From Octopus sinensis (Eukaryota): DNA of 64,000 nucleotides. The position numbers were made by a program, and so were the translations under genes. Shown here one piece after another: positions 14,560 to 64,000 of the stretch; position 1 is the first letter of the stretch; every line of letters starts with the position of its first letter. Under the pieces are notes generated by a model, which searched no databases, was not told where the DNA came from, and saw nothing but the letters and a program-made list of their open reading frames with translations. The stretch covers positions 100,750,001 to 100,814,000 of the forward strand of contig NC_043003.1 in NCBI RefSeq assembly GCF_006345805.1, given 5' to 3'.

Positions 14560-16732
14560 ATGCAAAACAGACAATTTTGCTCGATCCTTGCTTTATGTTG
14601 AAGTACCTGTCTATTACACCTGGTCAGGAAAAAAATGGGTAAAATGTATAAATGTAACCCCAGCTATCACCTGAGGCAGAAGAGATATTTCAAAGCAATG
14701 CTATTGAGAAAGTTTACACAGACCATCCAAATCAACAAGAGTACTTCATTTTACGTCTCCTCCGACACACTGTCCGAGGTCCCACATGTTTTCAAGATCT
14801 GCAAATGTTTAATGGAGACCTCTGTCCAATCTTTAGGGTGGCCTGTGCAAAACATGGACTACTTGAAGATGATACTCACTGGCACCAAACATGTGACAAG
14901 GCTTCTGTTGCCAAAATGCCAACTCAACTACGCCAATTATTCTCCATCATGCTTATGACATGTGCCTTGAGTGATCCTGTAACACTTTGGGATATTGACA
15001 GAGAAAGCATGTTGGAGGATATACTACGCAGAATTTAAAGGTAGAACCCATCGCAAACAGTCAAATACAACGAGGCTATTTTCAACGAGGCATTCAATGA
15101 CTTAGACAACCGAGTGAAATACATGGGTGGCAGTGGAGTTGCTTTTGGTCTGCCTCAACCAGATGTGTCACCTGGAACCCTTGACATTGAATATGTATGG
15201 GAGATCAATGATGGCGTCGAAGAAATGGCAGCTTTAGTGGGTGATAATGAACACAAATTGAACAAGGATCAAAAAACTGCCTTTGAATCCATTATTTCAT
15301 CCACTCATAGTGAGACTGGTAATCTCTTCTTTTTTGATTCTCCAGGTGGAACTGGCAAAACATTCATTATCAATCTTGTTTTGGTGAAGCTGCAACAAAA
15401 TAAGCAGATAGCTCTTGCTGTGGCATCAAATGGAACAGCTGCAACTCTGTTGAATGGTGGACGCACAGCTCATTCGCACTTCAAATTGCCTCTGGACCTT
15501 GCAAAAAAAGACATAGCAACCTGCAATATCACAAAAGCAAAAATTCACACCGAGTGCAAACTGATCATTTGGGATGAAGCAACAATAAGTCATAAGGGGG
15601 ATTTTGAGGTTCTTGACAGATTACTTTAAGATCTGAGGTACAACTCAAAGCTAATGGGCAGCCTAACAGTACTCCTTGCAGGCAACTTTCAACAAAAACT
15701 CCCAGTCATTGCAAAGGGAACGAGAGCAGATGAGGTAAATGTGAGCATCAAATCTTCCCTTTGGCAATTTGATGTCAAATATACACAAACTATTGGCGAG
15801 AGTTTGCCCAATCTGAACACACAATTCACAGACTATTGTTGGCTGAGAAAACATGCAATTTTGGAGCCAAAACATGTCACAGTTGATGGCATAAACAATC
15901 ACCTTCTGGAACAATTGCCTGGTGATTGTCGTACATACAAGTCAATTGATACTGTGCTCCACACCAATGATGCTGTTCATTACCTTATTGAATTCCTCAA
16001 TAGTCTTGCACCTTCAGGTCTACCACTGCATGAATTGCATCTAAAGGTTGGAGCCCCAGTTATGCTTTTAAGAAACCTTGATCCTCCAAAATTATGCAAT
16101 GGCATGAGACTTATTTCAAAAAAATTGATGCAGATAGTGTTGGAGGCAACAATACTAACTGGGAAAGCAAGTGGTGAAGATGTTTTCATTCCAAAGATTC
16201 CTCTGATTCCTTACGACACAGAAATTGATTTCAAAAGGCTACAATTCCCACTGAGATTAAGCTTTGCAATGAGCATCAACAAAGCACAGGGTCAGACATT
16301 GGAAGTGGTAGGCCTTAATCTGGTGGAACCTGCTTTTTCTCACAGATGATCTAGAGTTGGAAATCCGGAAAATCTATTCAACTATGCACCCAATGGCAAA
16401 ACCAAAACCATAGTCTATCATGAAACCCTGCAAGACTGAAATTTTGCAACAAAGATGCCTCTCCCTTTGACAACCTCTGACAACCTCTTACGCCAACCTC
16501 CGATAACCTCTCTCACCAACTTCTGACTATCTTTTTCGCCAACCTCCATAAACCTCTCTTGCCAACCTCCAGCAATCTCTCCATCCTCCAGCTGACAGTC
16601 TTTTGTACTTTTGCGTGATGGAAAAAATACACCTTTTGTGGCAGTTATAACGAAATTGCTTCCTTATATCAGAGTAAAAAAGTGTTTCAAAAGAACATCT
16701 TTACCCCTGGGAATTACCGGGTACACCAGCTA

Positions 16733-18083: not shown

Positions 18084-19331
18084 TTGGGTTGTCTGGAAAG
18101 TTTGTGCCGATTTATAGTAGCTTACCTTTCGACTTATTTTAGAACATGGTTGAGTCCATAAAATAGGATTTGACTACACCTCCGTTTAGAGCACAGCTTA
18201 AGCTATCTTTCCGCGGAAGAAGATTTATGTCCCTATAACCTGTGTTAATTCTGTAACCCTTTAAAATGGAAAATAAGAAAGTTCATTTTCCGCACTTGGT
18301 GCTTTTCTTTTTCCGTGAAGGGAGAAATACCTCACAAGCAACCAAAGAAATATGCACAGTTTACAGTGATGTTTCTTTATCTGAAAGAACTGTACAGAAG
18401 TGGTTCGCAAGGTTCCGAGCTGGAGATTGTAGCCTTATTGATAAAGAGCAATCAGGCAGACCATCCACTACAGATGATGACCAAATCAAGTCATTAATTG
18501 AGAATAACCCACATTGCACAACCCAAGAATTGGCAGAAAGCCTCAACCTATCAAAAGCCGTCATTCATGAGCACCTGGTAAAGATTGGGTACACAAATCA
18601 CTACAATATTTGGGTACCATGAGTTGAGTGAGAAAATCCTTTTGGATCACATTTCCATCTGTGATTCGCTTTATAAACAGAATGAAAAAGCGCCTTTTTT
18701 AAAGCAAATTGTGACAGGTGGTGAGAAATGGATAATCTACCAAAATGTTCAGAGAAAGCAACATGAGCCACCCCAAAAGTGAGTCTTCACCCTAAAAAGT
18801 CTTGCTTTGTGTCTGGTGGGATTGGAAAGGAATTCTGTTCTATGAGCTTCTCCCAAGTAACCAGACAATTAATTCTGAGAAATACTGCACACAACTGGAT
18901 GAGTTAAAAGCAGCAATTCAAGAGAAACATCCAGAATTGGCCAACAGGAAGGGTGTTGTTTTCCAACATGATAATGCAAGACCGCGTGTTTCTTTGGGAA
19001 CCAGACAAAAATTGCTGCAGCTCGGCTGGGATGTGTTACCCCACTGTCCATATTCACCAGATATTGCTCCTTTGGATTTCCACTTATTCATGTCTCTGCA
19101 GAATAGTCTTAATGGTAAAAATTTCAATTCCTTGGATGACATAAAAAGATACCATGATGAATTCTTTGCCATGAAACCACCTCAATTCTGGGAAGAGGGT
19201 ATTTTCAAGTTAAAGGAAAGATGGAGACGCAACAAAATGGTTCATATTTGGTTGATTAAAAATGTAATGACAAGTATTTATTGACCTTTTTCTTTCCTTT
19301 AAAAATCAGCACAAATTTCCGGACAACCCAA
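18084..19331 (+). mobile_element. Full-length mariner, mellifera-like, mildly decayed
   Basis: TA TSDs (18082-83, 19332-33); ~30-bp TIRs ttgggttgtctggaaagtttgtgccgattt / rc ttgggttgtccggaaatttgtgctgattt; WVP, HDNARP and YSPDIAPLDF motifs. Confidence 0.95.
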
Positions 19332-31070: not shown

Positions 31071-31094
31071 CAATTATTAATATTATTACTATCA

Positions 31095-31430
31095 GTGAAG
31101 GTGCATAGCTCAGTGGTTAGATCATCAAGCTTACAATCATGAGGTTGTGAGTTCAATTCCCAGACCGGGCTGCATGTTGTGTTCTTGAGCATGATACTTT
31201 ATTTCACGCTGCTCCAGTTAACTCTGCTGTAGAAATGAGTTGCAACATCACTGGTGCCAAACTGTATTGGGTTTTGCTTTTCCCTTGGATAACATCAGTG
31301 GTGTGGAAAGGGGAGGCTGGTATGTATGGGCGACTGCTGGCCTTCCATAAACAACCTTGACTGGACTTGGCCTCGGAGGTTAACTTTCTAGGTGCAATCC
31401 CATGGTCATTCATGACCAAAGGGGGTCTCC
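31095..31430 (+). mobile_element. tRNA-derived SINE, second family
   Basis: A box TAGCTCAGTGG and B box GTTCAATTCCC followed by an unrelated body; no CCA/acceptor-stem closure. Confidence 0.75.
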
Positions 31431-31452
31431 TCCTCCTCCTACAATTATTATT

Positions 31453-31487
<35 letters not shown>

Positions 31488-32757
31488 TATCATCATTTTA
31501 CACTGTTTGTTATTATTATTATTTCTTAATCAGTTACACCATTTTTCTTATTGTTTCATTAGACTGATGTAAAAAAGAAAACTGCAAATCCTATGAGAGT
31601 CATAAGACTAGCTTATGTTCCTCTTGAACAAATGTAAGTCAACAGCTGCATGAAAAAAGTGTGCAGGTAAGGAATTCCACAGAGACAGTATGAAGGGAGG
31701 AAGGATTGGGCATAAGTAGAGGGCTTGTGCATGTGCATGAATGTGATTTTTGACACCACACATCAATCACTATTGGACTTTATGAAATACAAAATAGATC
31801 AAGAAATGAAATGATAGTGATACATTTGTACACTACTGGACTTAAGTAACAAAAGAGTTACTCAAAACTACCTGAAAGGATTCCCTACAATTAAGCAAGA
31901 GAGAGAGAGAAATTTTCTGATAGGATGCTTGTGGATCACAAGTAACACTCCACTCTACAAGAAAAGCTTAACTGAGGACTGTAAACCAATGAAACACCAG
32001 TCAATTTGACAGTAGTAAACTATACAAACTAGTAGTACTTAACTATAGCTGGATGGTGCAAATGAGACCTAACTGTTTCAACTATGGTCAAAGTGCAGCA
32101 TCAGTGATAGAATAGAAAGTACTGAATCTACTCAGTTGATTGACCAATATTTATTAACTCAGCTATTCAAGCCATTTGACTAAATCGTGTTCATTATCTC
32201 AACAGAGACAATATAATGAGAAATCCTTTTTAACAAATGCAACAAAAAAAGTGAAGATTAATAGAGATATTTTTTAAATAAGTACCTCTGGCTAGGTAAC
32301 TATGTATCTCCTTTATGGCAGCACACCTCTTTCTTAACTCTCCCTCTCTTTCTAGGTGACCATGTCCCTCCTCTTCAGCAGTACACCTATTCTGCCTTCA
32401 TTCTTCTTAACTCTTGCTCTCTTTTTCTCACTCTCTTCCCCTCTCTCTCTCCCTCTCTCTAGATGAGTAACCATGTACCTGCGCAACAGCAACACATCTG
32501 TTTCTATCTCTCTGTCACACCTTTCATCATCTGACACAAGATCACCTTCTCCGGTGTCCCCTTCTCTCGCCCACACAATCTGTCTTAGGAACAATGAATG
32601 ACAAAACAAAATATCAAAGAAAAAATGTCTAGCTAGACAAATAATACACTCCCCCAAAAGGAAGGACAACAAGAAACTCTCGGTTCTTGCATGACTTTGT
32701 ATTTATTTGATCTTTTAGCACAAACATGGCTAATTACGGAACAAAATTTATACTTAC

Positions 32758-36529: not shown

Positions 36530-37700
36530 GCTGAAAAGTTCCTGGCTTTGGATAAAAGAAAAGCTGTAGGATCAGTTGATCATGAGTTTACCCAACATAT
36601 TCCCCTCTCAGATTCACACACTTATTGCAGTTGTCTTTCAGTTTTTCTATGGCTTGTAAAAAGAACTCAGAAGGTTGGGCCTCTAACCAGGCCTATGTAA
36701 TAGCAATCACTTCCAAATCTGAGTGAAATTTAATTCCCTTAAGATGTTTCTTAAGTTGTGGAAAGAGGTGATAGTTGGAGGGGGCCAAGTCATAAAAGTA
36801 AGTTAGATGGTCTACAAATTCAAAGCCAAAGTCGCTTATTTTTCTTAGAGTTTTGTGTGCTGGTGCATTGTCCTGAAAAAACAGGACACCATGGCTCAGC
36901 TTTCCATGGTGTTTCTGCTTCAAAGCTTCATGCAATTCATCCAAGAGAGACTTATAGTATTCTGTGTTGATGGTGTGGCCTTTTGGCAACTCTTTGTCCC
37001 AAAACACTGAAGCCAAAATCTTTTCAGCTAACTTCCAGGTTTGAAAATGCTTGTGATGTATTGAACCTCTGTAGTGTCACTCCATTGATTGTTGGTTGGT
37101 CTGGGAACCATAATGATGGGGCTAAGGTTCGTCCATGGTGACTAAATGAGCCATAAAATTAACTTTCTTCACTGCAAACCAGTCCAAAAATTGATTTTGG
37201 TGTTGTCACTTATATGCTTCTGATCTGCGTTCAAGGTATTTCAACACCTATTTATGGAAAGCCTTTTCATGTCTGAATGATGTGGTCAATTCTTTTGAGA
37301 AATCCCCAGAGTCTCAGCTATGACTTTAGCTGAAATCCTGTGGCCCTTGAGAATCATGACAGGCACTGCATTGGTTTTGTACTCTGTGATTATGGAAGTT
37401 GGCTGTCCTGACCAGGTTTTATCTGTGACTTCGAAATGACCTCTTTGAAACCTTGACACCCTGACTTTCATTGTGGAGTAAGGTGGGCAGCCATCCTTCA
37501 AGACTTCTTTTGTCTTGGATTTCCACTGCTCCTTTGCCTTGCAAAAAGAGAAACTTCATGATCACCCATTCTTCAATTTTATAAAAATCCACTGTAGGAG
37601 CTGTTATCATGCATTAAATCTGCAGAAAAGAGAAGGATGTATTGGTAACAGCTCTACCTTTTCACAATACCTATAAAGCCAGGAACTTTTCAGCACTCCA
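36530..37700 (-). mobile_element. Mariner (irritans-like), decayed
   Basis: TIR gctgaaaagttcctggcttt at both ends; QDNAPAH and YFYDLAPSNYHLFPQLK motifs. Confidence 0.88.
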
Positions 37701-40491: not shown

Positions 40492-40689
40492 GATCGTCTA
40501 AAATCAGCAAAGCTTTACAAGTGTAAAAAACCTCAGGCTTCCACTACAAATGGCATTGGTGCTGTTAAAAAACCAAAGACATTTGTTCCTGGTGCTAAAC
40601 TATCAACAGAAAAAAGATCAGCAGCTGCATCCATGGTTGGTTCAAGTCTACCTGCTGGATCTTCAAAAGAAGAAATTGAAGCCATTAAG
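40492..40689 (+). CDS. SNRPA1: U2 snRNP A' exon (198 nt): DRLKSAKLYK...KPKTFVPGAKLSTEKR...SKEEIEAIK
   Basis: T-rich CAG acceptor, GT donor, phase 0/0; aligns to human U2A' ERQEAEKMFKG...KTFNPGAGLPTDKK...DVEAIK. Confidence 0.9.
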
Positions 40690-42493: not shown

Positions 42494-42587
42494 AAAGCAA
42501 TATCAATGGCAAAGACTTTGCAGGAAGTGGAACGCTTGAACCAGATGCTACGGTCTGGACACATTCCTGGCTTTGAAATTAAAGGAA
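42494..42587 (+). CDS. SNRPA1: U2 snRNP A' exon (94 nt): KAISMAKTLQEVERLNQMLRSGHIPGFEIKG
   Basis: CAG acceptor, GTGAGG donor; matches NAIANASTLAEVERLKGLLQSGQIPG; ends in phase 1. Confidence 0.95.
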
Positions 42588-43569
42588 GTGAGGATTATTT
42601 AAAAAAAATTTTTTTGTTTACTTTTTTATTACCAGTAGAATGTATGTTTATTTTTCTATGTTAAGAAAATTTCTTTATAACTCTGATCACTCAATTCTGA
42701 AGAAAGAACAAATTTGCTCATAGCTGGGAACTTTATCAAAATAGTAAATGTTGTAAGATGGTTCAATCAAACAGAGTACAACCCAATTAACAATAGTGTG
42801 TTGATTGAGTGGGCCCTTTTCCTAAATCTTAACATTTTGAATCTACATTTTCTTACCATGTCTTACGCACACACATACATATATACATGCACAAGCATGG
42901 CTGTTTGGTTAAGAAGTGTGCTTCCCAGCCATGTCATTTTAGGTTCAGTCCCACTGTCTGGCATCTTGGATGTCTTCTGCAATAGTCCCAAGCTGACCCA
43001 AGTCTCGTGATTGGATTCAGTTGGCAAAAACTGAAAGAAACTACTGAAAGAAACTACTTTGTGTGTGTGTGTGTGTTTGCGTATTCTAATTTTGACATTA
43101 CATGGTAGTTGTAAAACAAGTGTTTATATCATACAATCATCGTCATTCATTTTCAATCTTCCATGAAAACATTTCTGGCCCTGAGGAAATATTTACCTTG
43201 CTTGGAAACAACTGAGAGACAGCAACATCAAAAATCTACCTCAGTAAATTCCATCTGAGCCATCTGGAAAAGTGATCATTAAAATGGTGATGGGTGATAG
43301 AGCCACATATGCACATATAATGTCATCATCATTTTATGCCTACTTTCCATGCTTGCATATGTCAGATAGGTCATCACTGTCTAAGTTTCCTATCCAGAGG
43401 ACAGATTAGAGGATCATTTTTCACTCGTATGTTACTTTTTGGTACAGTTTATACTGCTAGATCCCCCTCCTGTTGCCAGCCTTGTACAGGGTGTCGTGGA
43501 TGTATTTTATTGTAGCACTTGCACTAGACAGGTTGTCATATCTTTGACACTGATAGTCATAGACATGAC

Positions 43570-45020
43570 TCTAGCATGCAGAAGTGGTATTCTGGGATGC
43601 TAGACAGTGTATCAGAGAGAACCTAGATGTTGTGGTTGAGTACTTTGTACATACAGATAATGGTTTGCTTGCACTTACTGATTCTAAGAAGAAAGAGGCA
43701 TGGAAGTGTCGCTATGAAAGGTTGCTAAATGTGGGGAGAAGGAGAATCTTCCTAATATGGGCCAGCCATCAGAATTGACAGTAGTTTGATTGGTAGAGCA
43801 GTTAAAGATATGAAAACAAAAAAAAAAGCTAATGCTCCATTGGGAATTACTGCTAAGATACTTAAAATATTTGATGGAGTAGGATACAGTCTGGTTGCCT
43901 GTATAGTTTAATCAGGTAATTCAGGAAAGTGTCATTCCTAATGATTTGTGTAGCAGTTTTATAGTCAGCTGCTACAAGAGTAAAGAAGATGCCTTAGAAG
44001 TAATTAGAGACATCAAATTACTGGATCAGGTCATGAAAGTTACAGAGAGTTATAACCTAATTAATTAGAAATAGAGTAGATGAGATACAGTTTGATTTTG
44101 TGTTGAGTAGAAGTACTACTGATGATATCTTCTTAGACAACTGCAGAAGTATTATACTTGACATTTGTTGACTTGGAAGAAGCCTTTGGCAGAGTGTTTT
44201 GCTCTGTGAAATGGTGGTCTCTGAGGAAGCCAAGTATAGATGGATGACTTGTGGAAGTTGCGCAAGTCACATACAGGGCTGCTGTCAGTAAAGTGATAGT
44301 TAACCAGGAGTACAGTGATGAATTTAATGTACAGGTAGGCGTTCACCAGGACTCAGTTCTCAGTCTCATCCTATTCATCATTGTCTTCCAAGGCCATAAC
44401 AGTCAAATTCAAGACCTGCTGTCCTGGGAACTGCTATGTACTGTTGGTCTCACTCTCATAGTAGAAAAGAAATTGCAGGCGTAAAAGCAAAACCTGGAAT
44501 CATTGTCTTAAAGTTAACTTAGCAAACACCGAAGTTCTAATAAGCAAGAAAACAAGCAGGACCCTACCTACCTCAGATAAATGGCTCTACTTGATATGTA
44601 GGAAAGGTGTAGGCAGTAATTCCACATGCTGTACCCAGTGCAAGCTATGAGCACACTAGATGTGCTGTGAAATTACTGAAAGGTTGTAAGAGAAAACTGT
44701 TTTTGTGGAAGATGCACATGTACCATAGAGTTTGAGGTCACATGGGAAATTGATTCTCTCAAATCCCTAGATTGATAGTTTCTGTTAGCTAGGTGACCTA
44801 ATTAGCTACCGAGGAGGATGTTCTGAAAATGTAGTCACTAGAATAAGAATAGAATGGAGAAAGTTCAGAGCCGTTACTTCTATTAGCAATGAAAAATTTC
44901 TCCCTTTTCAAGAGGAAGGCAGATTGTATGATGCTTGTGTACATTACAACTATGTGACATAGTAGTGAGATGTGGGCTCAGAATACTGATGACATGAAAG
45001 ATTAGAGAATAAAGCTTAGT
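43570..45020 (+). mobile_element. Heavily decayed RTE-clade LINE (RT region), intronic
   Basis: AWKCRYERLLNV, IKLLDQVMKV, FVDLEEAF.RV, FNVQVGVHQDSVLS.ILF, and a CTQCKLW-like segment. Confidence 0.8.
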
Positions 45021-45584
45021 AGTGAGAATTTTTTTTTTCCTTTCTCTTTTTTCCCTGTTCTTTTGTGTTGTAAGTTTCGTGGCACAAAAAAACCCCACTC
45101 AGTACCCTCTGTAAGAAGAGCATCCATCATAGAAAGCATGCCAAAGATGACTTTGGAGCTCAACACAGCCCTGCAAATTGCAGATTCCCTGTTAAACTGT
45201 CTTACTCATGCCAGCATGGAAAGTGGATGTTGAATGATGTTGATGATCCATCAGCTGCTTTACAGAGAGTACTGGATACATTTTATTATGATGCCTTCCA
45301 TAATCAGCTAGTATAAGTTGATAATGTTAACTAAAATTACAAAAGATTGCACTAAGCAACAAGAGTGCTAGAGATTTGTTGTTCATCCCATATAACCATG
45401 GGATTACAATCGAAGGAATTAGGAGGCCACATGGGAAATTGATTCTCTCAAATCCCTAGATTGATAGTTTCTGTTAGCTAGGTGACCTAATTAGCTACCG
45501 AGGAGGATGTTGTGAAAATGTAGTCACTAGAATAAGAATAGAATGGAGAAAGTTCAGAGAGCCGTTACTTCTATTAGCAATTGG

Positions 45585-46130
45585 GACTAGTTAAAGTCAT
45601 AGAAATTCTCTGACAACCACTTCTGACATTGTTTTCAGTGTTGTGCAATTGGTCTTATCATCTGAGAAGAATCAGATCATCCCCAGCTCAACAGGCTACC
45701 TCAGTTTGTTCAGGAGCTTCTTTGCCTTCATCAAGTGGTTCTCCTTGGCCTTAACTGACAGAATGTGTCCCTTGCACTTTTTATATGAGTGGTAGCAAAG
45801 GTCCTCATTCAGGGCCAATTTCATGGTAGCTATTACAAGACCCATCTCTCTCGCTAAAGCCTGGATCTTCCACCACCTAGTCCCACAGTTGTTGGATGAA
45901 TCCTGGCTTGCAAACACAGTTCGAACTCCTGCTGGTCATAGCTTCATGGTGTCAGCATTTTGATACCCATTGTAAATCATCTTAATGAGGTAACTTTTTT
46001 CCAATATTCAGATGGCTGCCAATCCTTTGTGCCAGCTATCTTTTTCTCAACTGCAATTTTAATTTTTATGTTCTCCAATGTTGTTAGCTGTTTGTTTACC
46101 ACACATCAAGCTGTTCTTGAAAAAAGGAGA
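45585..46130 (-). mobile_element. Tc1/mariner (maT/DD37D-like) fragment
   Basis: ALAREMG...ALNEDL..HSYK..KGHILS.KAKENHL.KAKKLLNKLR...FFSDDK. Confidence 0.7.
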
Positions 46131-47467
46131 TAACAATTGTCAAATTTAGCCCTAACACTCTATATGTTTATATTAGTGTGGGGCTAAAAACTACATTCAA
46201 ACAAAAACACTTGATTGTGTTCATGTCCGACTGATGTATCTCCCTCACTCTACTGTCCAGTTTGTATTTAAATACTAAGGTTGATGTTATTACAATTTGT
46301 GGCCTAATCTGACAACCAATAGATGATTAAAAGACAAGCTTCATGTGATATATATTTTAGGATTTCATGTTGTGTGCATATGTGTATAATTATATCTCCA
46401 TGTGCATCATCATTATCACTATTTGACATCTGTCTCCCATGCTGGTGTGGTTTAGATGGTTCAACATGATCCAACAAGCCAGTTTCTATGGCTGGGTGCT
46501 CTTCCTTAAACTGCTTTACAAAGTGTACTGGGTGGTTTTTTCCTGACACCATCATGAGTAAATGTTACCAACTAACTCAACTGAATGGGGTTGTAGTAGA
46601 GAGGGAGATGACTTTATGTCAGGTGTTGAGAGGGTATGATTGAAGGAGGAGATACATTGCTATCTCACATTATATAAGGGCAAAAAGAAGTAGCTAATAA
46701 GAAGACGATGATGGTAACAAGATGTCTGTATACTCAAGGTGAGAATAAGAGAAAATACAAACAGGATTGGGAAAAGTAGGTGGGTAAATTGAACAGAGTA
46801 TGAAAAGAGAGTGTTGGTGTTAGTGTAGAGATGAATGCAATGCACGGAACAAAAGTGGATGTGTAGTCAGTGGAAAATTTCAGTATGATGAGGGGAAGAG
46901 AAAGAAATAGGAAGGAGGAGTGATAAGTGGTGGTTCAGGAAGGATGGAAAGTAGCAGTATAATAAACTTGTAGATAGATCAAAAACTAGGGAGATGTACA
47001 GTGACTGAGCAGGATGTCAGAGGTATGTAGGAGGGGTTAAAGTGAGTGAGGGACAAATGTAGGGAAAGTTATCAATAGCTGATAAGGGAGAGTGCTAAGG
47101 ATGAGGTGTGGCAGTCCTAAGATTGGCTCAGGAGAGGGAGAGATAACTGGGGCATAGAAAGGGATGACCAGATAAATTGGAAAGGTATGATATTGAAAAT
47201 GATGGATGGATTTTAAAAGGAAGTAGTTTCAAGGAGGAAGAGATGTAACTGGAGCACAAAGTAGTAGTGAAATGCTTGCAGATTTTGCTCATGATTGCAG
47301 CAACTGAATACTGTTGTAGTTAGAAGATCAATTTCCACTATTACATACCATGTCTTTCTGGCTCTTCTTATCCATATGCATCACATAACCATACCAGTAC
47401 ATTCAACATTATATAAAAATCAATGTGCGTGTGCATATATTTATAATGTATATATGTTTCTTTGTAG

Positions 47468-49542
47468 GGCCAGAAGAGGATGCAGAAGAGGAAGAAGTTA
47501 GCGGAAAGGAGAGTTTGCCACGAGAAACTTTGCGGAAAGATATACATCAGAAAGAGCAAAACCGAAAAAGGGAGCACCAAGATGATGATAGGTGGCAGGA
47601 AAGTGAAGCAAAAAGAAAGAAAGAAAATCAAGACAAACAAGTGCAGCAACAAAAGACCCAACGTAAACAGGATCTTGAACAAGAACGTAAACAACAAGAA
47701 TTAGAACGCAAAAAAGAGTTTGAACGTAAGAAAGAAATTGAAAAACAAAAGGAGCTTGATAAACAGATGGAACTTGAAAAACAGAAAGAAGTTGATCGAC
47801 AAAAGGAACGTCAGAAAGAGATAGAGAGGCAGAGGGATTTAGAAAGACAAAAAGAGGTAGAGAAGCAGAAGGAATTAGAAAGACAAAAAGAGATAGAGAG
47901 GCAGAAAGAATTAGAAAGACAAAAAGAGTTCGAGAGGAAGAAGGAAATTGAACGCCAGCAAAAATTAGAACAACAGGCAGAGCGAGAGCACCAACAAGAG
48001 TTAGAACGACAAGCAGAGCTAAAGCGCCAACACGAGTTAGAACAACAGGCAGAGTTTGAACGCCAACAAGAACTGGAACGTCAACAGGAAGAGCTAGAGC
48101 ACCAACAGGAACTGGAACAACAGGCAGAGCTGAAGTGCCAAGAGTTAGAACGACAACAGGCAGAGCTAAAGCGCCAAGAGTTAGAACAACAACAGGCAGA
48201 GTTGGAGCGCCAACAAGAGCTGGAACGACAACAGGCAGAGTTGGAGCGCCAACAAGAGCTGGAACGACAACAGGCAGAGTTGGAGCGCCAACAAGAGCTG
48301 GAACGACAACAGGCAGAGATGGAGCGCCAACAAGAGCTGGAACGACAACAGGCAGAGATGGAGCGCCAACAAGAGCTGGAGCGACAACAGGCAGAGTTGG
48401 AGCGCCAACAAGAGCTGGAACGACAACAGGCAGAGTTGGAGCGCCAACAAGAGCTGGAACGACAACAGGCAGAGTTGGAGCGCCAACAAGAGCTGGAACG
48501 ACAACAGGCAGAGATGGAGCGCCAACAAGAGCTGGAACGACAACAGGCAGAGCTGGAGCGCCAACAAGAGCTGGAACGACAACAGGCAGAGTTGGAGCGC
48601 CAACAAGAGCTGGAACGACAACAGGCAGAGTTGGAGCGCCAACAAGAGCTGGAACGACAACAGGCAGAGTTGGAGCGCCAACAAGAGCTGGAACGACAAC
48701 AGGCAGAGTTGGAGCGCCAACAAGAGCTGGAACGACAACAGGCAGAGTTGGAGCGCCAACAAGAGCTGGAACGACAACAAGAACTGGAACGACAACAGGC
48801 AGAGTTGGAGCGCCAACAAGAGCTGGAGCGACAACAGGCAGAGTTGGAGCGCCAACAAGAGCTGGAACGACAACAAGAACTGGAACGACAACAGGCAGAG
48901 TTGGAGCGCCAACAAGAACTGGAACGACAACAGGCAGAGTTGGAGCGCCAACAAGAACTGGAACGACAACAGGCAGAGTTGGAGAGCCAACAAGAACTGG
49001 AACGACAACAGGCAGAGCTGGAGCATGAACAAGAGTTGATGTGTCAAATGAACCAGCAGAAACTTCTGCAATTGAAGCAGCAGCAGTTGGAACAGGAAGA
49101 ACTGGAGCGACAGATGTTGGAACAACAGCAGCAACAAATGGTCATTGAAGCAGCTGCTGCAGCAGAGATTGAGGAAGAAGAAGAGGAAGATGAAGAGGAA
49201 GAGGGAGAAGTGGATGCTGGTGAAGAAGATGATGAAGAGCAAGCTGTTCCTTCTACTCCGCCTCTTCATCTACAGCATTCTGTGGGAGGAGACTCTGCCA
49301 AATCTGGTGAGGAAGAAGAAGAGGAGGATGATGACGACGAAGAAGAAGAAGAAGAAGAAGAGGAGGAGGAGGAGGAGGAGGAGGAGGGTGAAGTAGAGAC
49401 TGTTGAAATAGAGGATGATGAAGATAGCCAAGATGTCAAAGTAGAAGTTGAAGATGAAGAGGAAGAAGGAGATGCAGGAGAAGAGGTGGAAGTAGAGGAG
49501 GAAGTTGAAGTAGAAGACGATGAGGAAGTGGAGGAAGAGGAG

Positions 49543-49577
<35 letters not shown>

Positions 49578-49641
49578 AGAAGAGGAGGAAGAAGAAGAAG
49601 AGGAGGAGGAGGAAGAAGAAGAAGAAGAAGAGAGGAGTTAG
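47468..49641 (+). CDS. SNRPA1: Giant terminal exon of U2A' (coiled-coil repeats + acidic tail); probably ends at TAG 49716-49718 if a 1-nt indel near 49630 is corrected
   Basis: ttctttgtAG acceptor; phase-1 junction A|GG CCA gives R-PEEDAEEEE, like human G-PTDDGEEE; 724 uninterrupted codons. Assignment to SNRPA1 rests on phase and weak similarity, not on transcript data. Confidence 0.72.
48190..49023 (+). repeat. Coding minisatellite, 39-nt unit (QQAELERQQELER) x ~20 plus two extra 18-nt half units
   Basis: Unit caacaggcagagttggagcgccaacaagagctggaacga, counted from the translation. Confidence 0.95.
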
Positions 49642-50903
49642 AGGAGGAGGAAGAAGAAGAAGAGGACGATGAAGAAGATGAAGAAATGGAATGTGAAGAT
49701 GCTGATGAGAGTGATTAGTTGTTTGAAGTATTGTACAAGTGTGTGTATGTATGTATATATGTATGTGAGAGAGAGAGAGAGTACAGGTATGTAAATATAT
49801 TTCTCTAAGAAGGTGTGTGTTTGTATATAACTGCTCCTCTGAGTGTGATCTTTTAGACTTTATTGAATGTTTTCTCAGAACCTCTCTTCTCATTGTTTAA
49901 CTTCATCATCACATCATTGTAATTAAATCATTTTTATTATTTTCTTCATCAGTTTTTTTTTTTTAGGACAAAATAATTGGTGCATAATTTAAGAAGAATG
50001 CCAATTTGTTACCTCTGAATATATGGTATGCTGTTAAATGGGAAAATAGCTAAGAAAATGAAAAGCCCTGTTTTTCTCTTTTAGAACTAAATGAATCACT
50101 TATAGTAGTTTAATTGGTGATACTTCTACTTAGGGTGCACTCTGCAAGCCTTTCTTCGTTCAACTTTTGAAGATGTGCCAGTTCATGCATTACTTGCACT
50201 AGGCTGTCTTTCTGTCCAATGAAAGACTTCTCATTTACTTAATTCACTGCCAAAATCCAGAAGTTGAGCTCTGTCAGTGTGGGCTCTTTGTAGAGACATC
50301 ATTTTCAGTGTCCCTGTATACATACACAAGCATTCCCACAAATATTTGTATACATCCATGTATTTTTATAGTTAACTTGTTAAGAAGCAAGTTCGATCCT
50401 TTATTCACAATTTCTTGTTGATGTAACAACATTAAACGTACAACATGAATAGGTCTTTGTATTTGATCTCAGTTAATTGTTCTATTTATTTCTTCTTTAA
50501 TTTGTTTTCCTTTAATTTATCCAACAGCAAGTCATATTGGAACCAAGAACTGGTGGATCTATTGAATTCAGCTCTTCATCATTTTTACTGGTTCCAACAT
50601 GTGTGTGCGTGTAATTATTTCTGTTCCAGTTCTTTTTCAGGCAGTTTTCGTTGTTGTAAACAACAAATTGGCAGCTGATATCACACCAACTGGCTTCTTA
50701 GTCATGCAGTTACTGTGAAGTTTCAAACACCACTTTTAGAAAGTATTTTTTGTACAACTATGAGTGAATTTTATTTTCTCTCTGAATGGACAAACTGCTG
50801 CATCTGGAGATATGATAAGGCCACATATCAATCGGATATTGTTTTGCATAACAAAGCCATGCCTGATAAGGCTATGATACTACACTTGATTGGTTAAAAC
50901 ATA

Positions 50904-51285: not shown

Positions 51286-53544
51286 CAGAGGTTGAACAAA
51301 ATAATGGAAGCACCGTAAAATTTCAAACAAATTTATTTTAATATGGGGTAGGACCGCCTTTTGCAGTAATTACAGCTTTAATTCTGCGAGATATGAACTC
51401 ATACAAAATTTGAATTGTTTCCAAAGGAATTTTTGTCCATTCTTCAACTAAAACAGTCTCCAGTTCTTGTGATAATGGTAGAGGATATTGACTTCTTGCT
51501 TGTTTTTCTAAAATGCACCATAAATCTTGGGACTGTGGTAGCCAGATGTTCAACTTCACTAGAATGTTTCTCATGCCATTCAGTAACAACTTTAGCTGTG
51601 TGAATTGGTGCATTTTCATCCTGAAAGATTACGTTTCCCTCCGGAAACAGTTCCACAGCCATAGGATGAATTTGATCAAATAAAATGCTTAAATAGTCTT
51701 GGCTATTAATTCTGCCATGAAGGGAAACCATTGGGTCGGCAGATTTCCAAGATATAGACACCTTCCAAATCATCACAGATTCTCCATGTTCAACAAGTGG
51801 AAGAAGGCAGTCTGGGTCAAATGCTTCTTTTGGCTGTCTCCACACATATACTCAGCCAGTGGTCGGAAATAAGGTAAAAGATGACTCGTCCGAAAAAATA
51901 ACATTCTTCCACTGCTCTAGGGATCAATTCTGTAGGTTTTTATTCCACTGTAAATGCTTTGCAACGTTTTTGAAACGAGCGGTTTTTTGATTGCAGCCCT
52001 CCCGTAAAATCTGGCTTTGTGCAACTCCTGGTGCATAGTTTTTGGGAGCTGTACTTTTGTGATCCTTTCTAGCAATTTGTGTAAGAGTCCGACAGTCACT
52101 ATCTGAAAGTTTTGGTTTTCTTCCAGAGTTTCGTTTCGAAGAGGAGGTTTTTCCCTCTTTCTCAAAGGCTGCTGTTACTTTTGAGTCAGTACTTCTTGAT
52201 ACACCAAATATTTCGGCTGTTTACATTACACTAGTGTCTGCCGTACGAGCACCAATGACTTGACCTCTTTGAAAGTCCATAGATCTGTCATTTTAATTAT
52301 CTTTTTCTGATGGTATCTGAAAAGAAACAGCAATTTTAGCAAGACATATTTCGATACCAAACTGCCCAAAGCCGCCCGAAAAAATTTTGGTTAATGTGAC
52401 CAAACCGCCCAAACCCGCCCGAATTTACCTATTCATATTTAAATGAGAATATCAGAGCAAATCTCTTTAGTACATTCGTGAAAACATGTATTATATTTCG
52501 TAAACAGTTCAACTACAGTTTTGTACAACAATCGAAGTGTAATTTTAATTCCATGAATTTTGGGAGATTTTTTTCTGAAATTTGTTCCTATTGTGTTTTC
52601 AAAATTTGTTATTCTGACAAAAAGTGGATACGAATTTCATTATATCAAGCAGCGAGTCAGAATTCGAAGGATTTTCTACTGAAGACCTTCATAAATCTAA
52701 CTCTATGACTGAAAAAAAAAAGCATGTGGTATTTGATAATGAATCTGATGTTTCATTTTCCGAAAGTGAAAACAGTGAATCCGAGATCTCCGACAGCGAT
52801 AAAGAAAATGAATTGGCACCTGAATGGAGTGAAAATTTAAAAACTGTTTCTTTCGGTGATTTTTCTGAAGAAACTGGACCAAGCCACAGACTTTCCCAGA
52901 AGAGTAAAGCCTTAGACTATTTCTTTTCACTTTTTCAAATGAGCCCATTTGAAATCATTACGGCGGAAACGAACCGTTATGCTAAACGTAAACAAAGCGA
53001 AAGAAAGGATAGTTAGTGGTTTCCCACAACCTTAAATGAAATTAAGACTATTTTGCCATAAATATTATTATGGGTATCAGAAAGTTACCCAGAATAACAA
53101 ATTCTATCGTAAAATTTTGTTGTATACCCAATTGAATATTAGCTAATAACCCATTTTCTATAGCGATGTTTGAACAAAATTTTTATAATTTTATATATTG
53201 TTGAATTTACCTGTATCTACCTGCAATTAGAGTCACTTTGTGACAAAAATTATAGTATAGAATTGGTTGAGAACATTTCATTAAATTATCTTCCAAAATT
53301 CACGTTAATATATTGATAAATAAAAAAGTTATTGTTGTTTAATGAAACCAGACTAAATTTATGATTACGTTAGAAATTAATTGAAACACATAAGGGGTGT
53401 ATTTTGGTCAGAAATATAGTAACAAAAGGGTTAAGCAACACTAATAATAAATCAAAAAACATAAAAATAAATAAGCTTTTGACGGTTTTATAGATATTTC
53501 AAAATTATGATGCTAGGTGTTTCCATTATTTTGTCCAACTCCTG
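51286..53544 (-). mobile_element. Tc1-like (DD34E) transposon, decayed, with nested piggyBac
   Basis: TA TSDs; 29-bp TIRs cagaggttgaacaaaataatggaagcacc / rc caggagttggacaaaataatggaaacacc; FQRGQVIGAR, IFQDENAPIHT and WLPQSQDL motifs. Confidence 0.92.
52350..53430 (+). mobile_element. piggyBac derivative (third copy) inserted in the Tc1 5' UTR
   Basis: Right end GTAACAAAAGGG + TTAA (53431-34); left TIR degenerate (tttcgatacc); acidic N-terminus ORF 52624-53016. Confidence 0.9.
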
Positions 53545-61745: not shown

Positions 61746-64000
61746 TTAGGAAGATGGATACGTTAGGAGTTCAGAACTTACCCGAAAAACTTGCACAAAC
61801 CTTGCTGGCCATCGAACTGTTCTTCCTGATTTGGTGTGTCGGGGTTGTGCAGCATCTGTGGTGTTCGCTGGAGTTGCCGAGTCTGTTTGAGGAAAAGAGG
61901 GGACTGAATGTAAGTCCTCCTCGATGAAAGCTTTTTTTAAACGATCAATCGAGACCGTATTTCGTTTACCTCCAATATCGAGGACGAAATACTTGGGTTC
62001 TCTTTTGATGACCTTGTAGGGCCCGGAATATGGTGGTCGAAGTTGAGAGGGTATCCCATCATTCCTCACGAAGACATGAGTCCATGTGTTGATATCTTTT
62101 GGGACACGTGAAACGACGTTCTGTTGTCTAGGGCCTGAGGGTGATACTTGCGACATGGATGTTCGTAATCGGTGCACATATTGTTGTGGGTCAGGGAAGT
62201 TTTGTGAAACAGGTTCGATCATCTGCCCAGGTAAGGTGAGTGTTGTGCCATAAACGAGTTCGGCCGGAGTATATCCCAGTTCTTCCTTAATCGTGGATCG
62301 AATTCCAAGGAGGATGAGAGGGAGATGTTCCAACCAGTGAGAACTGTCTGGAGCAGCTTTTATAGATGCCTTGAGTTGGCGGTGAAAGCGTTCCACCATG
62401 CCATTTGCTGCAGGGTGGTAAGCTGTAGTGCGGGTGTGTTTACACCCGAGGAGACGAGTCAGCTCGGTGAAAAGGTGGGAATCGAACTGACGTCCTCTGT
62501 CGGTGGTAATTGTTGCGGGTGTGCCAAAACGCGAAACCCATTGTGATATCAGCGTTTTAGCGACCGTTTCTGCTGATATATCAGATAGGGGCCAGGCTTC
62601 GGGCCATCGCGAGAACCTATCTACGCAAGTTAGCAAATATGAATAGTTCTGCGAAGGTGGCAGGGGTCCAACGATATCAATGTGAACGTGCTGAAATCGT
62701 GCATCGGGCTGCGAAAATGAACCGATTGGTGATTTTATGTGCCGGTGGATTTTCGATTTTTGGCACGCAACACAGCACTTGGTCCATTCTCTGATATCCT
62801 TGTTGATACTGGTCCACACAAAACGGGTCGATATTAGCTTTTGAGTGGAGCGAATACCAGGATGTGACAGAGAATGTAGAGCGGAGAAAACTTCTCGACG
62901 ATATTTCTGTGGTACATAAGGGCGTTGGTAACCAGTGGAAATATCACACCAAATATGGGCTGTGGATGATGGTAGTGGAACATGCTGAAATTTCAGAGAT
63001 GACGAATTCCGGAGCTTTAGAAGTTCTTCGTCATTCTCCTGGTCAGCTGCTATACGTGCCAGATCAATTGTAGACGTGGTGTGGATAGCATTGATCTGCG
63101 CACGTGAAAGTGCATCGGCTGCCACGTTGGTCGTCCCTTTGATGTGGCGTATATCCGTCGTGTACTGCGATATGAAATCGAGGTGGCGTATTTCTCTTGG
63201 CGAATGGCGATCCGGTTTGGTGTTAAATGCGTATACTAATGGCTTGTGGTCGGTATATATGGCAAAATTGGTACCTTCTAGCATATGACGGAAATGCTTA
63301 ACGGCCAGGTATGCCGCCAATAATTCCCGACTGAATGTGCTGTATTTGGTTTCCGCGGGTTTTAACCGCTTAGAAAAGAAAGACAACGGTTGCCATATAC
63401 CGTCAACAAGCTGTTGTAGCACACCTCCGATTCCGGAATCGGATGCATCAACGAGTAAACATCGTGGGGCGTCTGGTTTTGGATAAACCAACATGGTAGC
63501 GCTAGATAACGCTTTTTTCAGGGCAGCGAAAGAAACGAGTTGATCTTCGGTCAGAGCTATATCTGCGTTTTTGCAGGTTCGCTGACGTAGCAAATCCGTG
63601 AGCGGTTGCGCTATTTCAGCGAGGTGGGGCACGAACCGTCGATAGAAATTCGCTAGACCGAGATATTCCCTTAATTTGCGGAGAGATGTGGGTGGTGGAA
63701 AATCCACGATGGCCTTGACTTTCTCGGGAAGGGGACGAATTCCATTTTTATCGACTATATGGCCGAGAAAATGAAGGGAAGCAACTCCGAACAAACATTT
63801 AGTAGGGTTGATAACAATTCCGAATTTACGTAAACGTTCGAATAGCAGGTGAAGGTGTTGATTATGCTCTTCGTCCGAGTTACTGGCCACGAGTATGTCG
63901 TCTATGTAGGCATAGACGAAAGGCAAACCTCTAGTCACCATGTCGATAAACCTTTGGAATGTCTGTGCCGCGTTTCGTAAACCGAAAGGCATACGCAGGA
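61746..64000 (-). mobile_element. Ty3/Gypsy pol (RT C-part, RNase H, HHCC integrase), CsRn1/Kabuki-like, intact ORF running off the window
   Basis: 748 aa without stops: [68 protein letters not shown]. Confidence 0.96.

What the first reader, a model, noticed from the sequence alone, without database searches (positions are those of the whole stretch)
47468..49718. U2 snRNP A' appears to carry a ~750-aa coiled-coil/acidic C-terminal extension
Human U2A' ends about 20 residues after this splice junction (GPTDDGEEEMEEDTVTNGS). Here the next good acceptor is in the right phase, starts R-PEEDAEEEE and, after frame correction, ends DEEMECEDADESD*. The two ends resemble the two halves of the ancestral tail, so the expansion seems to have occurred inside it. 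Between them are a charged region, E/R/K/Q helical repeats and over 150 mostly acidic residues interrupted by a PSTPP linker. A core spliceosomal protein with a long helical rod and a polyanionic tail would be a lineage-specific innovation that I do not know to be described. It might act as a scaffold, an RNA mimic or chaperone, or a condensate modulator.
Basis: partly seen in the sequence, partly recalled or inferred. Interest (0 to 1): 0.85.

Follow-up and report, generated by a model that had tools for sequence, protein, structure and literature searches.

The report
Cephalopod U2A' with giant helical-acidic tail
The last coding exon of the octopus gene for the core splicing protein U2A' has grown from about a dozen codons to about 750, adding a ~500-residue charged helix and a ~165-190-residue acidic tail, and a cuttlefish has the same design, so it is old and maintained, though no RNA or protein data were checked here.

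Summary
An AG acceptor at 47468 is in phase with the donor of the penultimate SNRPA1 (U2A') exon at 42587. It opens a 723-codon ORF ending at TAG 49641. The +2 frame then runs on to TAG 49718.

The ORF is real coding sequence. Its degenerate repeats vary mostly at third codon positions, and the other two + frames hold 24 and 36 stops.

The decisive evidence is comparative.
- In the cuttlefish Acanthosepion pharaonis, the SNRPA1 last intron splits the same codon (A|GG, Arg).
- The cuttlefish exon starts with the ancestral acidic tail motif (EEVEEEMD).
- It continues into ~506 helical E/R/K/Q residues, the same Q-rich/AAAAAEIEE junction, ~180 acidic residues with a TPP(L/M)H linker, and the same C-terminus (EEMEVEDSD* against EEMECEDADESD*).
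- In the limpet Patella, the homologous phase-1 exon encodes only (G)VEEEEEEMDM*.

So this is the expanded terminal exon of U2A', shared by octopus and cuttlefish. The predicted protein is ~975-1000 aa.

The helical part lacks heptad periodicity, so it looks like a single charged helix rather than a coiled coil.

Not shown: transcripts, isoform ratio, protein and function. The octopus protein models retrieved here (157 and 246 aa) omit the extension. No paper describing it was found.

The parts
40492..40689 (+). SNRPA1 (U2A') exon, 66 codons, phase 0 (DRLKSAKLYKCKK...SSKEEIEAIK). It corresponds to human residues ~155-205.
   Evidence: tblastn with O. bimaculoides U2A' P0001, E=5e-31. Splice sites were read.
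42494..42587 (+). Penultimate SNRPA1 exon (KAISMAKTLQEVERLNQMLRSGHIPGFEIKG + 1 base). Donor GGAA|gtgagg.
   Evidence: Aligns to human U2A'.
42588..47467 (+). Last intron, 4,880 bp, phase 1. Its position and phase are shared with cuttlefish (1,980 bp) and Patella (1,271 bp).
   Evidence: No block is conserved with the cuttlefish intron.
47468..49641 (+). Terminal coding exon as assembled: the last two bases of the split Arg codon, then 723 codons, then TAG.
47470..47667 (+). Start of the extension (PEEDAEEEEVSGKESLPRETLRK...KRKKENQDKQVQQQKTQRK). It holds the remnant of the ancestral acidic tail and the GKESL motif shared with cuttlefish.
   Evidence: The HMMER alignment to the human tail GPTDDGEEEM crosses the junction. 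GKESL is present in Sepia. Overall similarity of the two exon starts is weak, z=3.
47668..49149 (+). Helical repeat region, 494 aa, no Pro/Gly. Degenerate 6/12-aa units (KEhERQ) lead into a near-perfect 13-aa unit (QQAELERQQELER; 39-bp array at 47970-49035, 27.8 copies). A Q-rich junction follows (QQKLLQLKQQQLEQEELERQMLEQQQQQMVIE).
   Evidence: TRF. Composition and periodicity. AF2 predicts helices at residues 18-192 and 201-319, pLDDT 84. The junction core is homologous to cuttlefish, z=10.7-14.9.
49150..49638 (+). Polyacidic region, 163 aa, 67% Asp+Glu, net charge -107. The PSTPP linker is at 49249-49263.
   Evidence: The cuttlefish counterpart is 179 aa, 82% acidic, with TTPPMH.
49627..49641 (+). 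Frame break inside the GAA/GAG run (GAGAGGAG), giving ...EERS and TAG in the main frame. It is probably a 1-base assembly error or allele in a triplet repeat.
49642..49718 (+). Continuation in the +2 frame (ELEEEEEEEEDDEEDEEMECEDADESD*), with stop TAG at 49716-49718. This is the conserved C-terminus.
   Evidence: Cuttlefish ends ...DDDDNEEEEMEVEDSD*.
49922..49927 (+). First polyadenylation-signal variant (ATTAAA), ~200 nt after the stop. It is a candidate 3' end.
   Evidence: consensus match only

Best explanation
WHAT IT IS. Window 47468-49718 is the terminal coding exon of SNRPA1 (U2 snRNP protein A'). In non-cephalopod molluscs this exon encodes about 11 acidic residues. In coleoid cephalopods it has been expanded about 70-fold. 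The growth came from tandem amplification of 18-, 36- and 39-bp units encoding E/R/K/Q/L helical repeats, and from GAA/GAG triplet runs encoding poly-Glu.

Spliced through the conserved phase-1 intron (42587^47468), it would give a U2A' of ~975-1000 aa. The parts, in order, are:
- the usual LRR domain, which binds U2B'' and U2 snRNA stem-loop IV (established knowledge; the LRR exons lie outside the window);
- the usual linker;
- an uninterrupted charged alpha-helix of ~500 residues;
- a Q-rich/poly-Ala junction;
- a polyacidic tail of ~165-190 residues that ends in a conserved EEME.ED..SD motif.

HOW IT PROBABLY WORKS (inferred, not shown). The helix has no heptad periodicity, so it would act as a long, stiff single-helix spacer rather than a dimerising coiled coil. 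At 1.5 A per residue its contour would be on the order of 70 nm. It would hold a tethered polyanion away from the peripheral 3' domain of the U2 snRNP.

The tail would then bind basic partners such as arginine-rich/RS-domain splicing factors or histones, in the manner of the acidic tail of the related LRR protein family ANP32.

Total length and segment lengths are similar in octopus and cuttlefish even though the repeat units differ. This suggests selection on physical properties (length, charge) rather than on sequence.
For: Shown:
- The ORF, its phase and its splice sites.
- A coding signature in the degenerate repeats, and 24 and 36 stops in the other + frames.
- The flanking upstream exons are U2A': E=2.5e-42 to O. 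bimaculoides U2A' and E=9e-11 to human U2A' chains in spliceosome structures, with that alignment running across the junction.
- The cuttlefish locus L003 has the same A|GG split codon. Its exon starts (R)INNEEVEEEMDIEE...GKESL and has the same order of modules and the same C-terminus.
- The octopus and cuttlefish junction cores are similar far beyond composition: z=10.7-14.9 against 1000 shuffles.
- The annotated cuttlefish SNRPA1 protein P0036 uses the junction.
- The Patella last exon is (G)VEEEEEEMDM* after a phase-1 intron at the same position.
- Gastropod, bivalve and chiton U2A' proteins are 245-259 aa.
- The last intron holds no conserved block.
- Segment lengths: helical 494 vs ~506 aa, acidic 163 (189 with the shifted end) vs 179 aa, whole exon 2251 vs 2165 nt.
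- Helix: no Pro/Gly, AF2 helices with pLDDT ~84-90, hydrophobic periodicity 6.5/3.25 (octopus) and 8/4 (cuttlefish) with none at 3.5.

Indirect: the O. vulgaris Blast2GO-derived name for the LRR-only model is 'small nuclear ribonucleoprotein A trichohyalin-like' (naming method in PMC10700109). This would fit a public protein named 'trichohyalin-like' that also matches the U2A' LRR.
Against: - No transcript, junction read or peptide was examined.
- The octopus models found do not contain the extension. O. sinensis XP_029639546 and O. vulgaris CAI9726212 stop at 157 aa. O. bimaculoides A0A0L8I707 is 246 aa and ends ...IKGK*.
- No ortholog of the extension is present in the protein collections.
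- The LRR exons are not in the window, so linkage to them is inferred from other assemblies.
- The assembled sequence has a premature TAG 26 codons before the conserved end.
- The cuttlefish assembly has two frame breaks inside its array.
- The octopus repeats are Q-rich and net negative, and opposite charges sit at i,i+3 rather than the i,i+4 typical of ER/K helices.
- The function of the tail is pure inference.
Confidence: 0.8

Rival explanations
1. The exon is a genuine SNRPA1 exon but is used only in a minor or tissue-specific isoform. Most U2A' would be a short protein made from another 3' end, for example the 246-aa ...IKGK* form annotated in O. bimaculoides, or intronic polyadenylation.
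For: - The O. bimaculoides model ends GK*, which needs a different acceptor.
- An AG at 49708-49709 followed by AG TGA would give exactly K* if the whole extension were skipped.
Against: - No other exon encoding the ancestral acidic tail exists between 42588 and 47467. That tail motif sits at the start of the big exon.
- None of the 18 A[AG]+stop acceptor candidates has a good polypyrimidine tract. The one at 49710 has 5 of 18 pyrimidines.
- The short models are explained equally well by annotation failure: a very long TE-filled intron (no LRR exon in the >40 kb of window upstream of 40492) and repeats that short-read assemblies cannot span.
- ~720-750 codons kept open and alignable across the octopus-cuttlefish split argue for regular translation.
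Confidence: 0.12
2. The ORF belongs to a separate 'trichohyalin-like' gene lying just downstream of SNRPA1, with its own promoter and first exon. U2A' would end elsewhere.
For: - The O. vulgaris name contains 'trichohyalin-like'.
- The octopus U2A' models found do not reach the ORF.
- Compositional hits of the ORF are to unrelated charged-repeat proteins.
Against: - Coding similarity to cuttlefish begins exactly at a phase-1 acceptor in both species, with the same split codon completed by the SNRPA1 donor.
- There is no in-frame ATG until codon ~100 of the exon.
- No conserved element that could be a first exon lies in the intron.
- The cuttlefish exon opens with the U2A' tail motif EEVEEEMD.
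- The human alignment crosses the junction.
Confidence: 0.05
3. It is non-coding satellite and microsatellite DNA (a 39-bp minisatellite plus GAA repeats) that is open by accident, lying in the 3' UTR or downstream of the gene.
For: - The 39-bp array is open in all three + frames and on the - strand.
- Variants within the near-perfect array are too few to show selection: 3 synonymous and 2 non-synonymous types.
- There is a frame break in the GAA run.
Against: - The non-repetitive and degenerate parts (~440 codons) are open only in this frame. The other frames have 24 and 36 stops.
- Third-position-biased variation, and six-codon Arg use at homologous repeat positions.
- Order of modules, junction core, TPP(L/M)H linker and C-terminal motif plus stop are conserved with cuttlefish.
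Confidence: 0.02

Closest known systems
Canonical U2A' (human SNRPA1, yeast Lea1; 239-255-aa chains in spliceosome structures such as 5xjc_o)
   Same: The window's two upstream exons and the first ~10 residues of the big exon align to human residues 155-246. The last intron has the same position and phase as in Patella. An acidic tail with an EEEM[DE] motif is present.
   Different: The canonical tail ends 11-20 residues after the junction. Here ~750 residues follow: a ~500-aa helix and a ~165-190-aa polyacidic region. This roughly quadruples the protein.
Teleost U2A' with expanded acidic tails (280-327 aa, e.g. Albula goreensis P0103, Dallia pectoralis P0147)
   Same: Growth occurs inside the acidic tail, between GP..EEEE and a retained terminal ...EEMEEDTPVNGS.
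   Different: Only +25 to +70 residues, acidic or Gly/Val-rich, with no helical repeat module. It is independent of the cephalopod event.
ANP32 / pp32 family (LRR + LRRcap + long low-complexity acidic tail; histone chaperones)
   Same: The sources name the U2A' hits 'U2A'/phosphoprotein 32 family A C-terminal domain-containing protein'. The cephalopod protein would combine an LRR domain with a >150-residue polyacidic tail, which is the ANP32 layout (from my own knowledge).
   Different: This is not an ANP32 member. The exons are orthologous to SNRPA1, and ANP32 proteins have no long helical spacer. The resemblance is an analogy of design, and binding to basic proteins was not tested.
ER/K single alpha-helix (SAH) domains (myosin VI/X, caldesmon) and trichohyalin-type charged repeats
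   Same: Very high E/R/K/Q content, no Pro/Gly over ~500 residues, no heptad periodicity, predicted continuous helix. The cuttlefish version has balanced charge: E+D 0.33, K+R 0.31.
   Different: Much longer than characterised SAH domains, which are tens to ~200 residues (from my own knowledge). The octopus repeats are Q-rich and net negative, with i,i+3 rather than i,i+4 charge pairing. Similarity to named proteins is compositional only, and there is no Pfam match.

Membership tests
U2A' (SNRPA1/Lea1) | N-terminal LRR domain with LRRcap (Pfam LRR_9, PF14580) that binds U2B'' | tested here: inconclusive
   The window holds no LRR exons. In O. vulgaris and O. sinensis, five LRR exons lie in L001/L002, with no further exon in 10 kb downstream. 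Physical linkage to this window was not shown. In cuttlefish, all exons including the big one are in one locus.
U2A' (SNRPA1/Lea1) | C-terminal linker region homologous to U2A' residues ~155-235 (KTFxPG ... EVERL...SGQIPG) | tested here: met
   E=2.5e-42 to O. bimaculoides U2A'. E=9.4e-11 to human U2A' PDB chains. tblastn.
U2A' (SNRPA1/Lea1) | The big exon occupies the position of the ancestral last exon (same intron position and phase, acidic tail motif at its start) | tested here: met
   Phase-1 introns in octopus (A|GG), cuttlefish (A|GG) and Patella (G|GA). Cuttlefish exon start EEVEEEMD compared with Patella VEEEEEEMDM*. The human alignment crosses the junction.
U2A' (SNRPA1/Lea1) | The exon is joined to the upstream U2A' exons in mRNA and the long protein exists | not testable with these tools
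   No RNA-seq or proteome resource is available. The only support is that the annotated cuttlefish model uses the junction.
Canonical (heptad) coiled coil | Hydrophobic residues with 3.5-residue periodicity (a/d positions) | tested here: not met
   Octopus power at period 3.5 is 29.5, against 1577 at 6.5. Cuttlefish has no power at 3.5 and peaks at 4/8. Repeat units of 6, 13 and 8 residues are not commensurate with heptads.
ER/K single alpha-helix (SAH) | Highly charged E/K/R-rich sequence, few hydrophobics, no helix breakers | tested here: met
   Octopus: E+D 0.30, K+R 0.18, Q 0.28, hydrophobic 0.17, P+G 0 over 494 aa. Cuttlefish: E+D 0.33, K+R 0.31, no P/G. AF2 predicts continuous helices.
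ER/K single alpha-helix (SAH) | Dense i to i+4 (and i+3) opposite-charge pairs | tested here: inconclusive
   Octopus: i,i+3 = 0.26 but i,i+4 = 0.07. This pattern is unlike classic E4K4 designs.
ER/K single alpha-helix (SAH) | Monomeric, stable helix in solution | not testable with these tools
   Needs CD, AUC or SAXS on recombinant fragments.
ANP32 (pp32) family | ANP32-type LRR sequence orthology | tested here: not met
   The exons are orthologous to SNRPA1, not ANP32. Only the LRR-plus-acidic-tail design is alike.

The most novel reading that the evidence does not exclude
In coleoid cephalopods every U2 snRNP carries a ~1000-aa U2A'. Its ~70-nm single-helix spacer and ~165-190-residue polyanionic tail have been kept at constant length since the octopus-cuttlefish split while the repeat sequence turned over. 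The core spliceosome would then have gained a lineage-specific physical module. That module could couple U2 to chromatin or to arginine-rich factors, or tune nuclear condensates, in a clade already known for unusual RNA biology.
Probability: 0.25. Interest if true: 0.8.

Novelty: new variant of a known kind. Interest (0 to 1): 0.6.

Why it matters
U2A' is among the most conserved spliceosomal proteins. It is 245-260 aa in the gastropod, bivalve and chiton proteins retrieved here and in human, and up to ~330 aa in some teleosts. A four-fold enlargement shared by octopus and cuttlefish, with similar module lengths but different repeat units, would be a rare structural innovation in a core snRNP. 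It would also be a natural test of what long charged helices and tethered polyanions do in the nucleus.

There is a practical point too. The octopus gene models retrieved here are truncated at 157 aa (O. sinensis RefSeq, O. vulgaris) and 246 aa (O. bimaculoides UniProt). Orthology tables and proteomics databases built on them would miss the real protein.

Tried and rejected
1. Protein-database searches for orthologs of the extension.
- The junction-spanning query found only three short U2A' proteins.
- The whole extension gave only compositional hits to unrelated charged-repeat proteins.
- The non-repetitive junction core gave 0 hits among 1.84 billion representatives.
- So no annotated ortholog was retrievable. 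Orthology had to be shown at the DNA level in the cuttlefish locus.

2. Exact look-ups of window ORFs (738-aa GTG-start, 624-aa ATG-start) and of P0001 were not on record.

3. The window does not overlap the O. vulgaris locus L001, where only transposon matches were found. The comparison with the O. sinensis locus L002 did not run in that call. None of L001's or L002's SNRPA1 exons is in the window. The window's species was not identified.

4. A search for an alternative last exon giving 'K*' found 18 candidates, none with a convincing acceptor.

5. BLASTP with composition correction found no alignment between the octopus and cuttlefish C-terminal parts. A Smith-Waterman shuffle test was used instead.

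6. A selection test inside the near-perfect 39-bp array was uninformative, with only 5 variant types.

7. Pfam gave no match on the extension.

8. Literature searches for SNRPA1/U2A' in octopus or cephalopods, and for trichohyalin-like in cephalopods, found nothing relevant.

9. The non-coding-satellite reading and the separate-gene reading were considered and rejected (see the rival explanations).
Full report
THE OBSERVATION

The window is TE-rich, AT-rich animal DNA. Of SNRPA1 (U2A') it contains only the last two canonical exons:
- 40492-40689 (DRLKSAKLYKCKK...EEIEAIK);
- 42494-42587 (KAISMAKTLQEVERLNQMLRSGHIPGFEIKG plus one base).

The donor is GGAA|gtgagg. The next strong acceptor, tttctttgtag|GG, puts the exon start at 47468. 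A+GG makes Arg, followed by PEEDAEEEE. The frame then stays open for 723 codons to TAG 49639-49641.

Inside the terminal GAA/GAG run, near 49630, the sequence reads GAGAGGAG. From there the +2 frame continues ELEEEEEEEEDDEEDEEMECEDADESD* to 49718.

IS IT CODING?

- The 39-bp array (47970-49035, 27.8 copies) is open in several frames and says nothing by itself. Its few variants are uninformative.
- The other ~440 codons are open only in this frame. The two other + frames have 24 and 36 stops.
- In 16 degenerate hexads (E-h-E-R-Q-K), nucleotide diversity by codon position is 0.34/0.09/0.58.
- The conserved Arg uses all six codons, CGN and AGR. This is the signature of selection on the protein.

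WHOSE EXON IS IT?

Protein databases gave no ortholog of the extension. The octopus U2A' models found are short:
- 246 aa ending IKGK* in O. bimaculoides;
- 157 aa ending in intron read-through in O. sinensis (XP_029639546) and O. vulgaris.

The answer came from the cuttlefish Acanthosepion pharaonis SNRPA1 locus (L003).
- Its penultimate exon ends AAAA|gtaagt and the next exon begins tattttacag|GG. This is the same split Arg codon as in octopus.
- The exon opens (R)INNEEVEEEMDIEEPVQQELEEQEMEGKESLKESKELKEQEELER... and runs on as E/R/K/Q repeats.
- Two frame breaks lie inside the array (~31,945 and ~32,335).
- The reading then continues through ...EQQKLLQQQQLQLKQQQLEEQEELERQLQEQQQQLMIEAAAAAEIEEDEEEE...TTPPMHQ...DDDDNEEEEMEVEDSD*.

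The octopus has QQKLLQLKQQQLEQEELERQMLEQQQQQMVIEAAAAAEIEEEEEE...PSTPPLHLQ...EEDEEMECEDADESD*. The junction core scores z=10.7-14.9 above 1000 composition-preserving shuffles. The exon starts share only GKESL (z=3).

The conserved C-terminus plus stop shows that the shifted frame at 49642-49718 is the biologically meaningful one. The break near 49630 is most simply a 1-base error or allele in a triplet run.

The annotated cuttlefish protein P0036 (303 aa) uses this same junction. It then leaves the frame through a small predicted intron.

OUTGROUPS

- In Patella caerulea (L004), the homologous intron is also phase 1 (AAAG|gtaact ... ttacag|GA). Its last exon encodes only (G)VEEEEEEMDM*.
- Gastropod, bivalve and chiton U2A' proteins are 245-259 aa.
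- HMMER aligns the spliced octopus product to human U2A' 155-246 across the junction, with RPEEDAEEE against GPTDDGEEE.
- tblastx and blastn find nothing conserved between the octopus (4,880 bp) and cuttlefish (1,980 bp) last introns. There is therefore no sign of a first exon for a separate gene.

I conclude that 47468-49718 is the expanded terminal exon of SNRPA1. The expansion predates the octopus-cuttlefish split. With ~153 LRR residues upstream, the protein would be ~974 aa as assembled, or ~1000 aa with the conserved end.

WHAT THE EXTENSION LOOKS LIKE

Octopus:
- 66 mixed-charge residues;
- 494 residues with no Pro/Gly (E+D 0.30, K+R 0.18, Q 0.28, hydrophobic 0.17, net -61);
- 163 acidic residues (net -107), or 189 with the shifted end.

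Cuttlefish:
- ~506 helical residues with balanced charge (E+D 0.33, K+R 0.31);
- 179 residues that are 82% acidic;
- whole exon 2165 nt, against 2251 nt in octopus.

The repeat units differ: 6/13 aa in octopus and 8 aa in cuttlefish. The arrays have therefore turned over while lengths stayed similar.

Hydrophobic periodicity is 6.5/3.25 in octopus and 8/4 in cuttlefish, with essentially no power at 3.5. A heptad coiled coil is therefore not supported. AF2 on the first 320 residues predicts long helices with pLDDT ~84. A single charged alpha-helix is the better description. The caveat is that the octopus charge pairing is i,i+3 and the repeats are Q-rich.

MECHANISM (INFERRED)

The LRR domain should bind U2B'' and U2 snRNA stem-loop IV as in other eukaryotes (established knowledge). 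The extension would project from the peripheral U2 3' domain as a stiff spacer carrying a polyanion. By analogy with the acidic tails of ANP32 proteins, which share the LRR/LRRcap design, the tail could bind histones or arginine-rich factors. None of this was tested.

WHERE THE EXPANSION HAPPENED

Teleosts offer a parallel: their tails grow internally while keeping ...EEMEEDTPVNGS. But the cuttlefish retains EEVEEEMD at the exon start as well as EEEEMEVEDSD at the end. The exact history is therefore undecided.

WHY ANNOTATIONS MISS IT

- No LRR exon lies in the >40 kb of window upstream of 40492. That stretch contains several transposon-derived ORFs.
- In O. vulgaris and O. sinensis no exon lies within 10 kb after LRR exon 5. 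This very long intron probably breaks gene models.
- The O. bimaculoides 'GK*' ending can be produced by an AG at 49708-49709 followed by AG TGA. That would be a model that skips the unassemblable repeats. This is an inference.
- The O. vulgaris name 'small nuclear ribonucleoprotein A trichohyalin-like' came from Blast2GO on nr hits. This would fit a public model named 'trichohyalin-like' that carries the U2A' LRR, but I could not check it.

NOVELTY

No paper on it was found. It is a new variant of a known protein, not a new kind of system. The missing piece is transcript and protein evidence.

Noticed in passing
window 1-40491; L001 39082-49096: The intron between the last LRR exon and exon 40492 must be very long. 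No LRR exon lies in the >40 kb of window upstream of 40492, a stretch that contains several transposon-derived ORFs. In O. vulgaris and O. sinensis no further exon lies within 10 kb downstream of LRR exon 5. The O. sinensis RefSeq and O. vulgaris models end there at 157 aa with a read-through ...KQKVSST*.
   Followed up: partly
window 49708-49715: An AG followed by AG TGA, 9 nt before the true stop, would give '...IKGK*' if spliced to donor 42587. That is exactly the end of the O. bimaculoides UniProt model A0A0L8I707. The polypyrimidine tract is poor, so this is probably a modelling artefact rather than a real isoform.
   Followed up: partly
L003 ~31,945 and ~32,335: The cuttlefish assembly has two frame breaks inside its ELERKRQE/ELERQRQE array. 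The annotated SNRPA1 model P0036 escapes through a small predicted intron (about 31,085 to 31,177) and ends in an out-of-frame ...KRTGKTTTISSRKGT*.
   Followed up: partly
window 47668-49149 vs L003 ~31,075-32,600: The helical region has nearly the same length in octopus (494 aa) and cuttlefish (~506 aa), although the repeat units differ (13/6 aa vs 8 aa). The acidic parts are also similar (163-189 vs 179 aa). This hints at selection on length.
   Followed up: partly
window 47545-47625: Two basic patches (NRKRE ... 13 residues ... KRKKE) near the start of the extension resemble a bipartite nuclear localisation signal. They are not obviously conserved in cuttlefish.
   Followed up: no
L001 and L002 6992-9658 (- strand): An intronless 888-aa ORF with matches to synaptonemal complex protein 1 (SCP-1) lies head-to-head with the SNRPA1 5' end in both O. 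vulgaris and O. sinensis.
   Followed up: no
window 15114-16349 (+): Two adjacent ORFs with PIF1-like helicase and Pif1 2B domains. This looks like a broken Helitron-type or PIF1-derived element inside the SNRPA1 intron.
   Followed up: partly
window 4458-4796, 18266-19284 (+): Mariner/Mos1-type transposase fragments (HTH_48, Transposase_1). Further ORFs at 36693-37016 and 51338-51845 on the - strand look similar by eye. Of those, only 51444-51845 was scanned, and it gave no Pfam match.
   Followed up: partly
window 61746-63992 (-): A 748-aa open pol fragment of an LTR retroelement (RT, RNase H, integrase) lies close to the window end. It was not analysed further.
   Followed up: no
P0103, P0107, P0147 (teleost U2A', 312-327 aa): Teleost U2A' tails are expanded internally by 50-70 acidic or Gly/Val-rich residues while keeping the terminal ...EEMEEDTPVNGS. 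This is a small-scale, independent parallel to the cephalopod expansion.
   Followed up: partly
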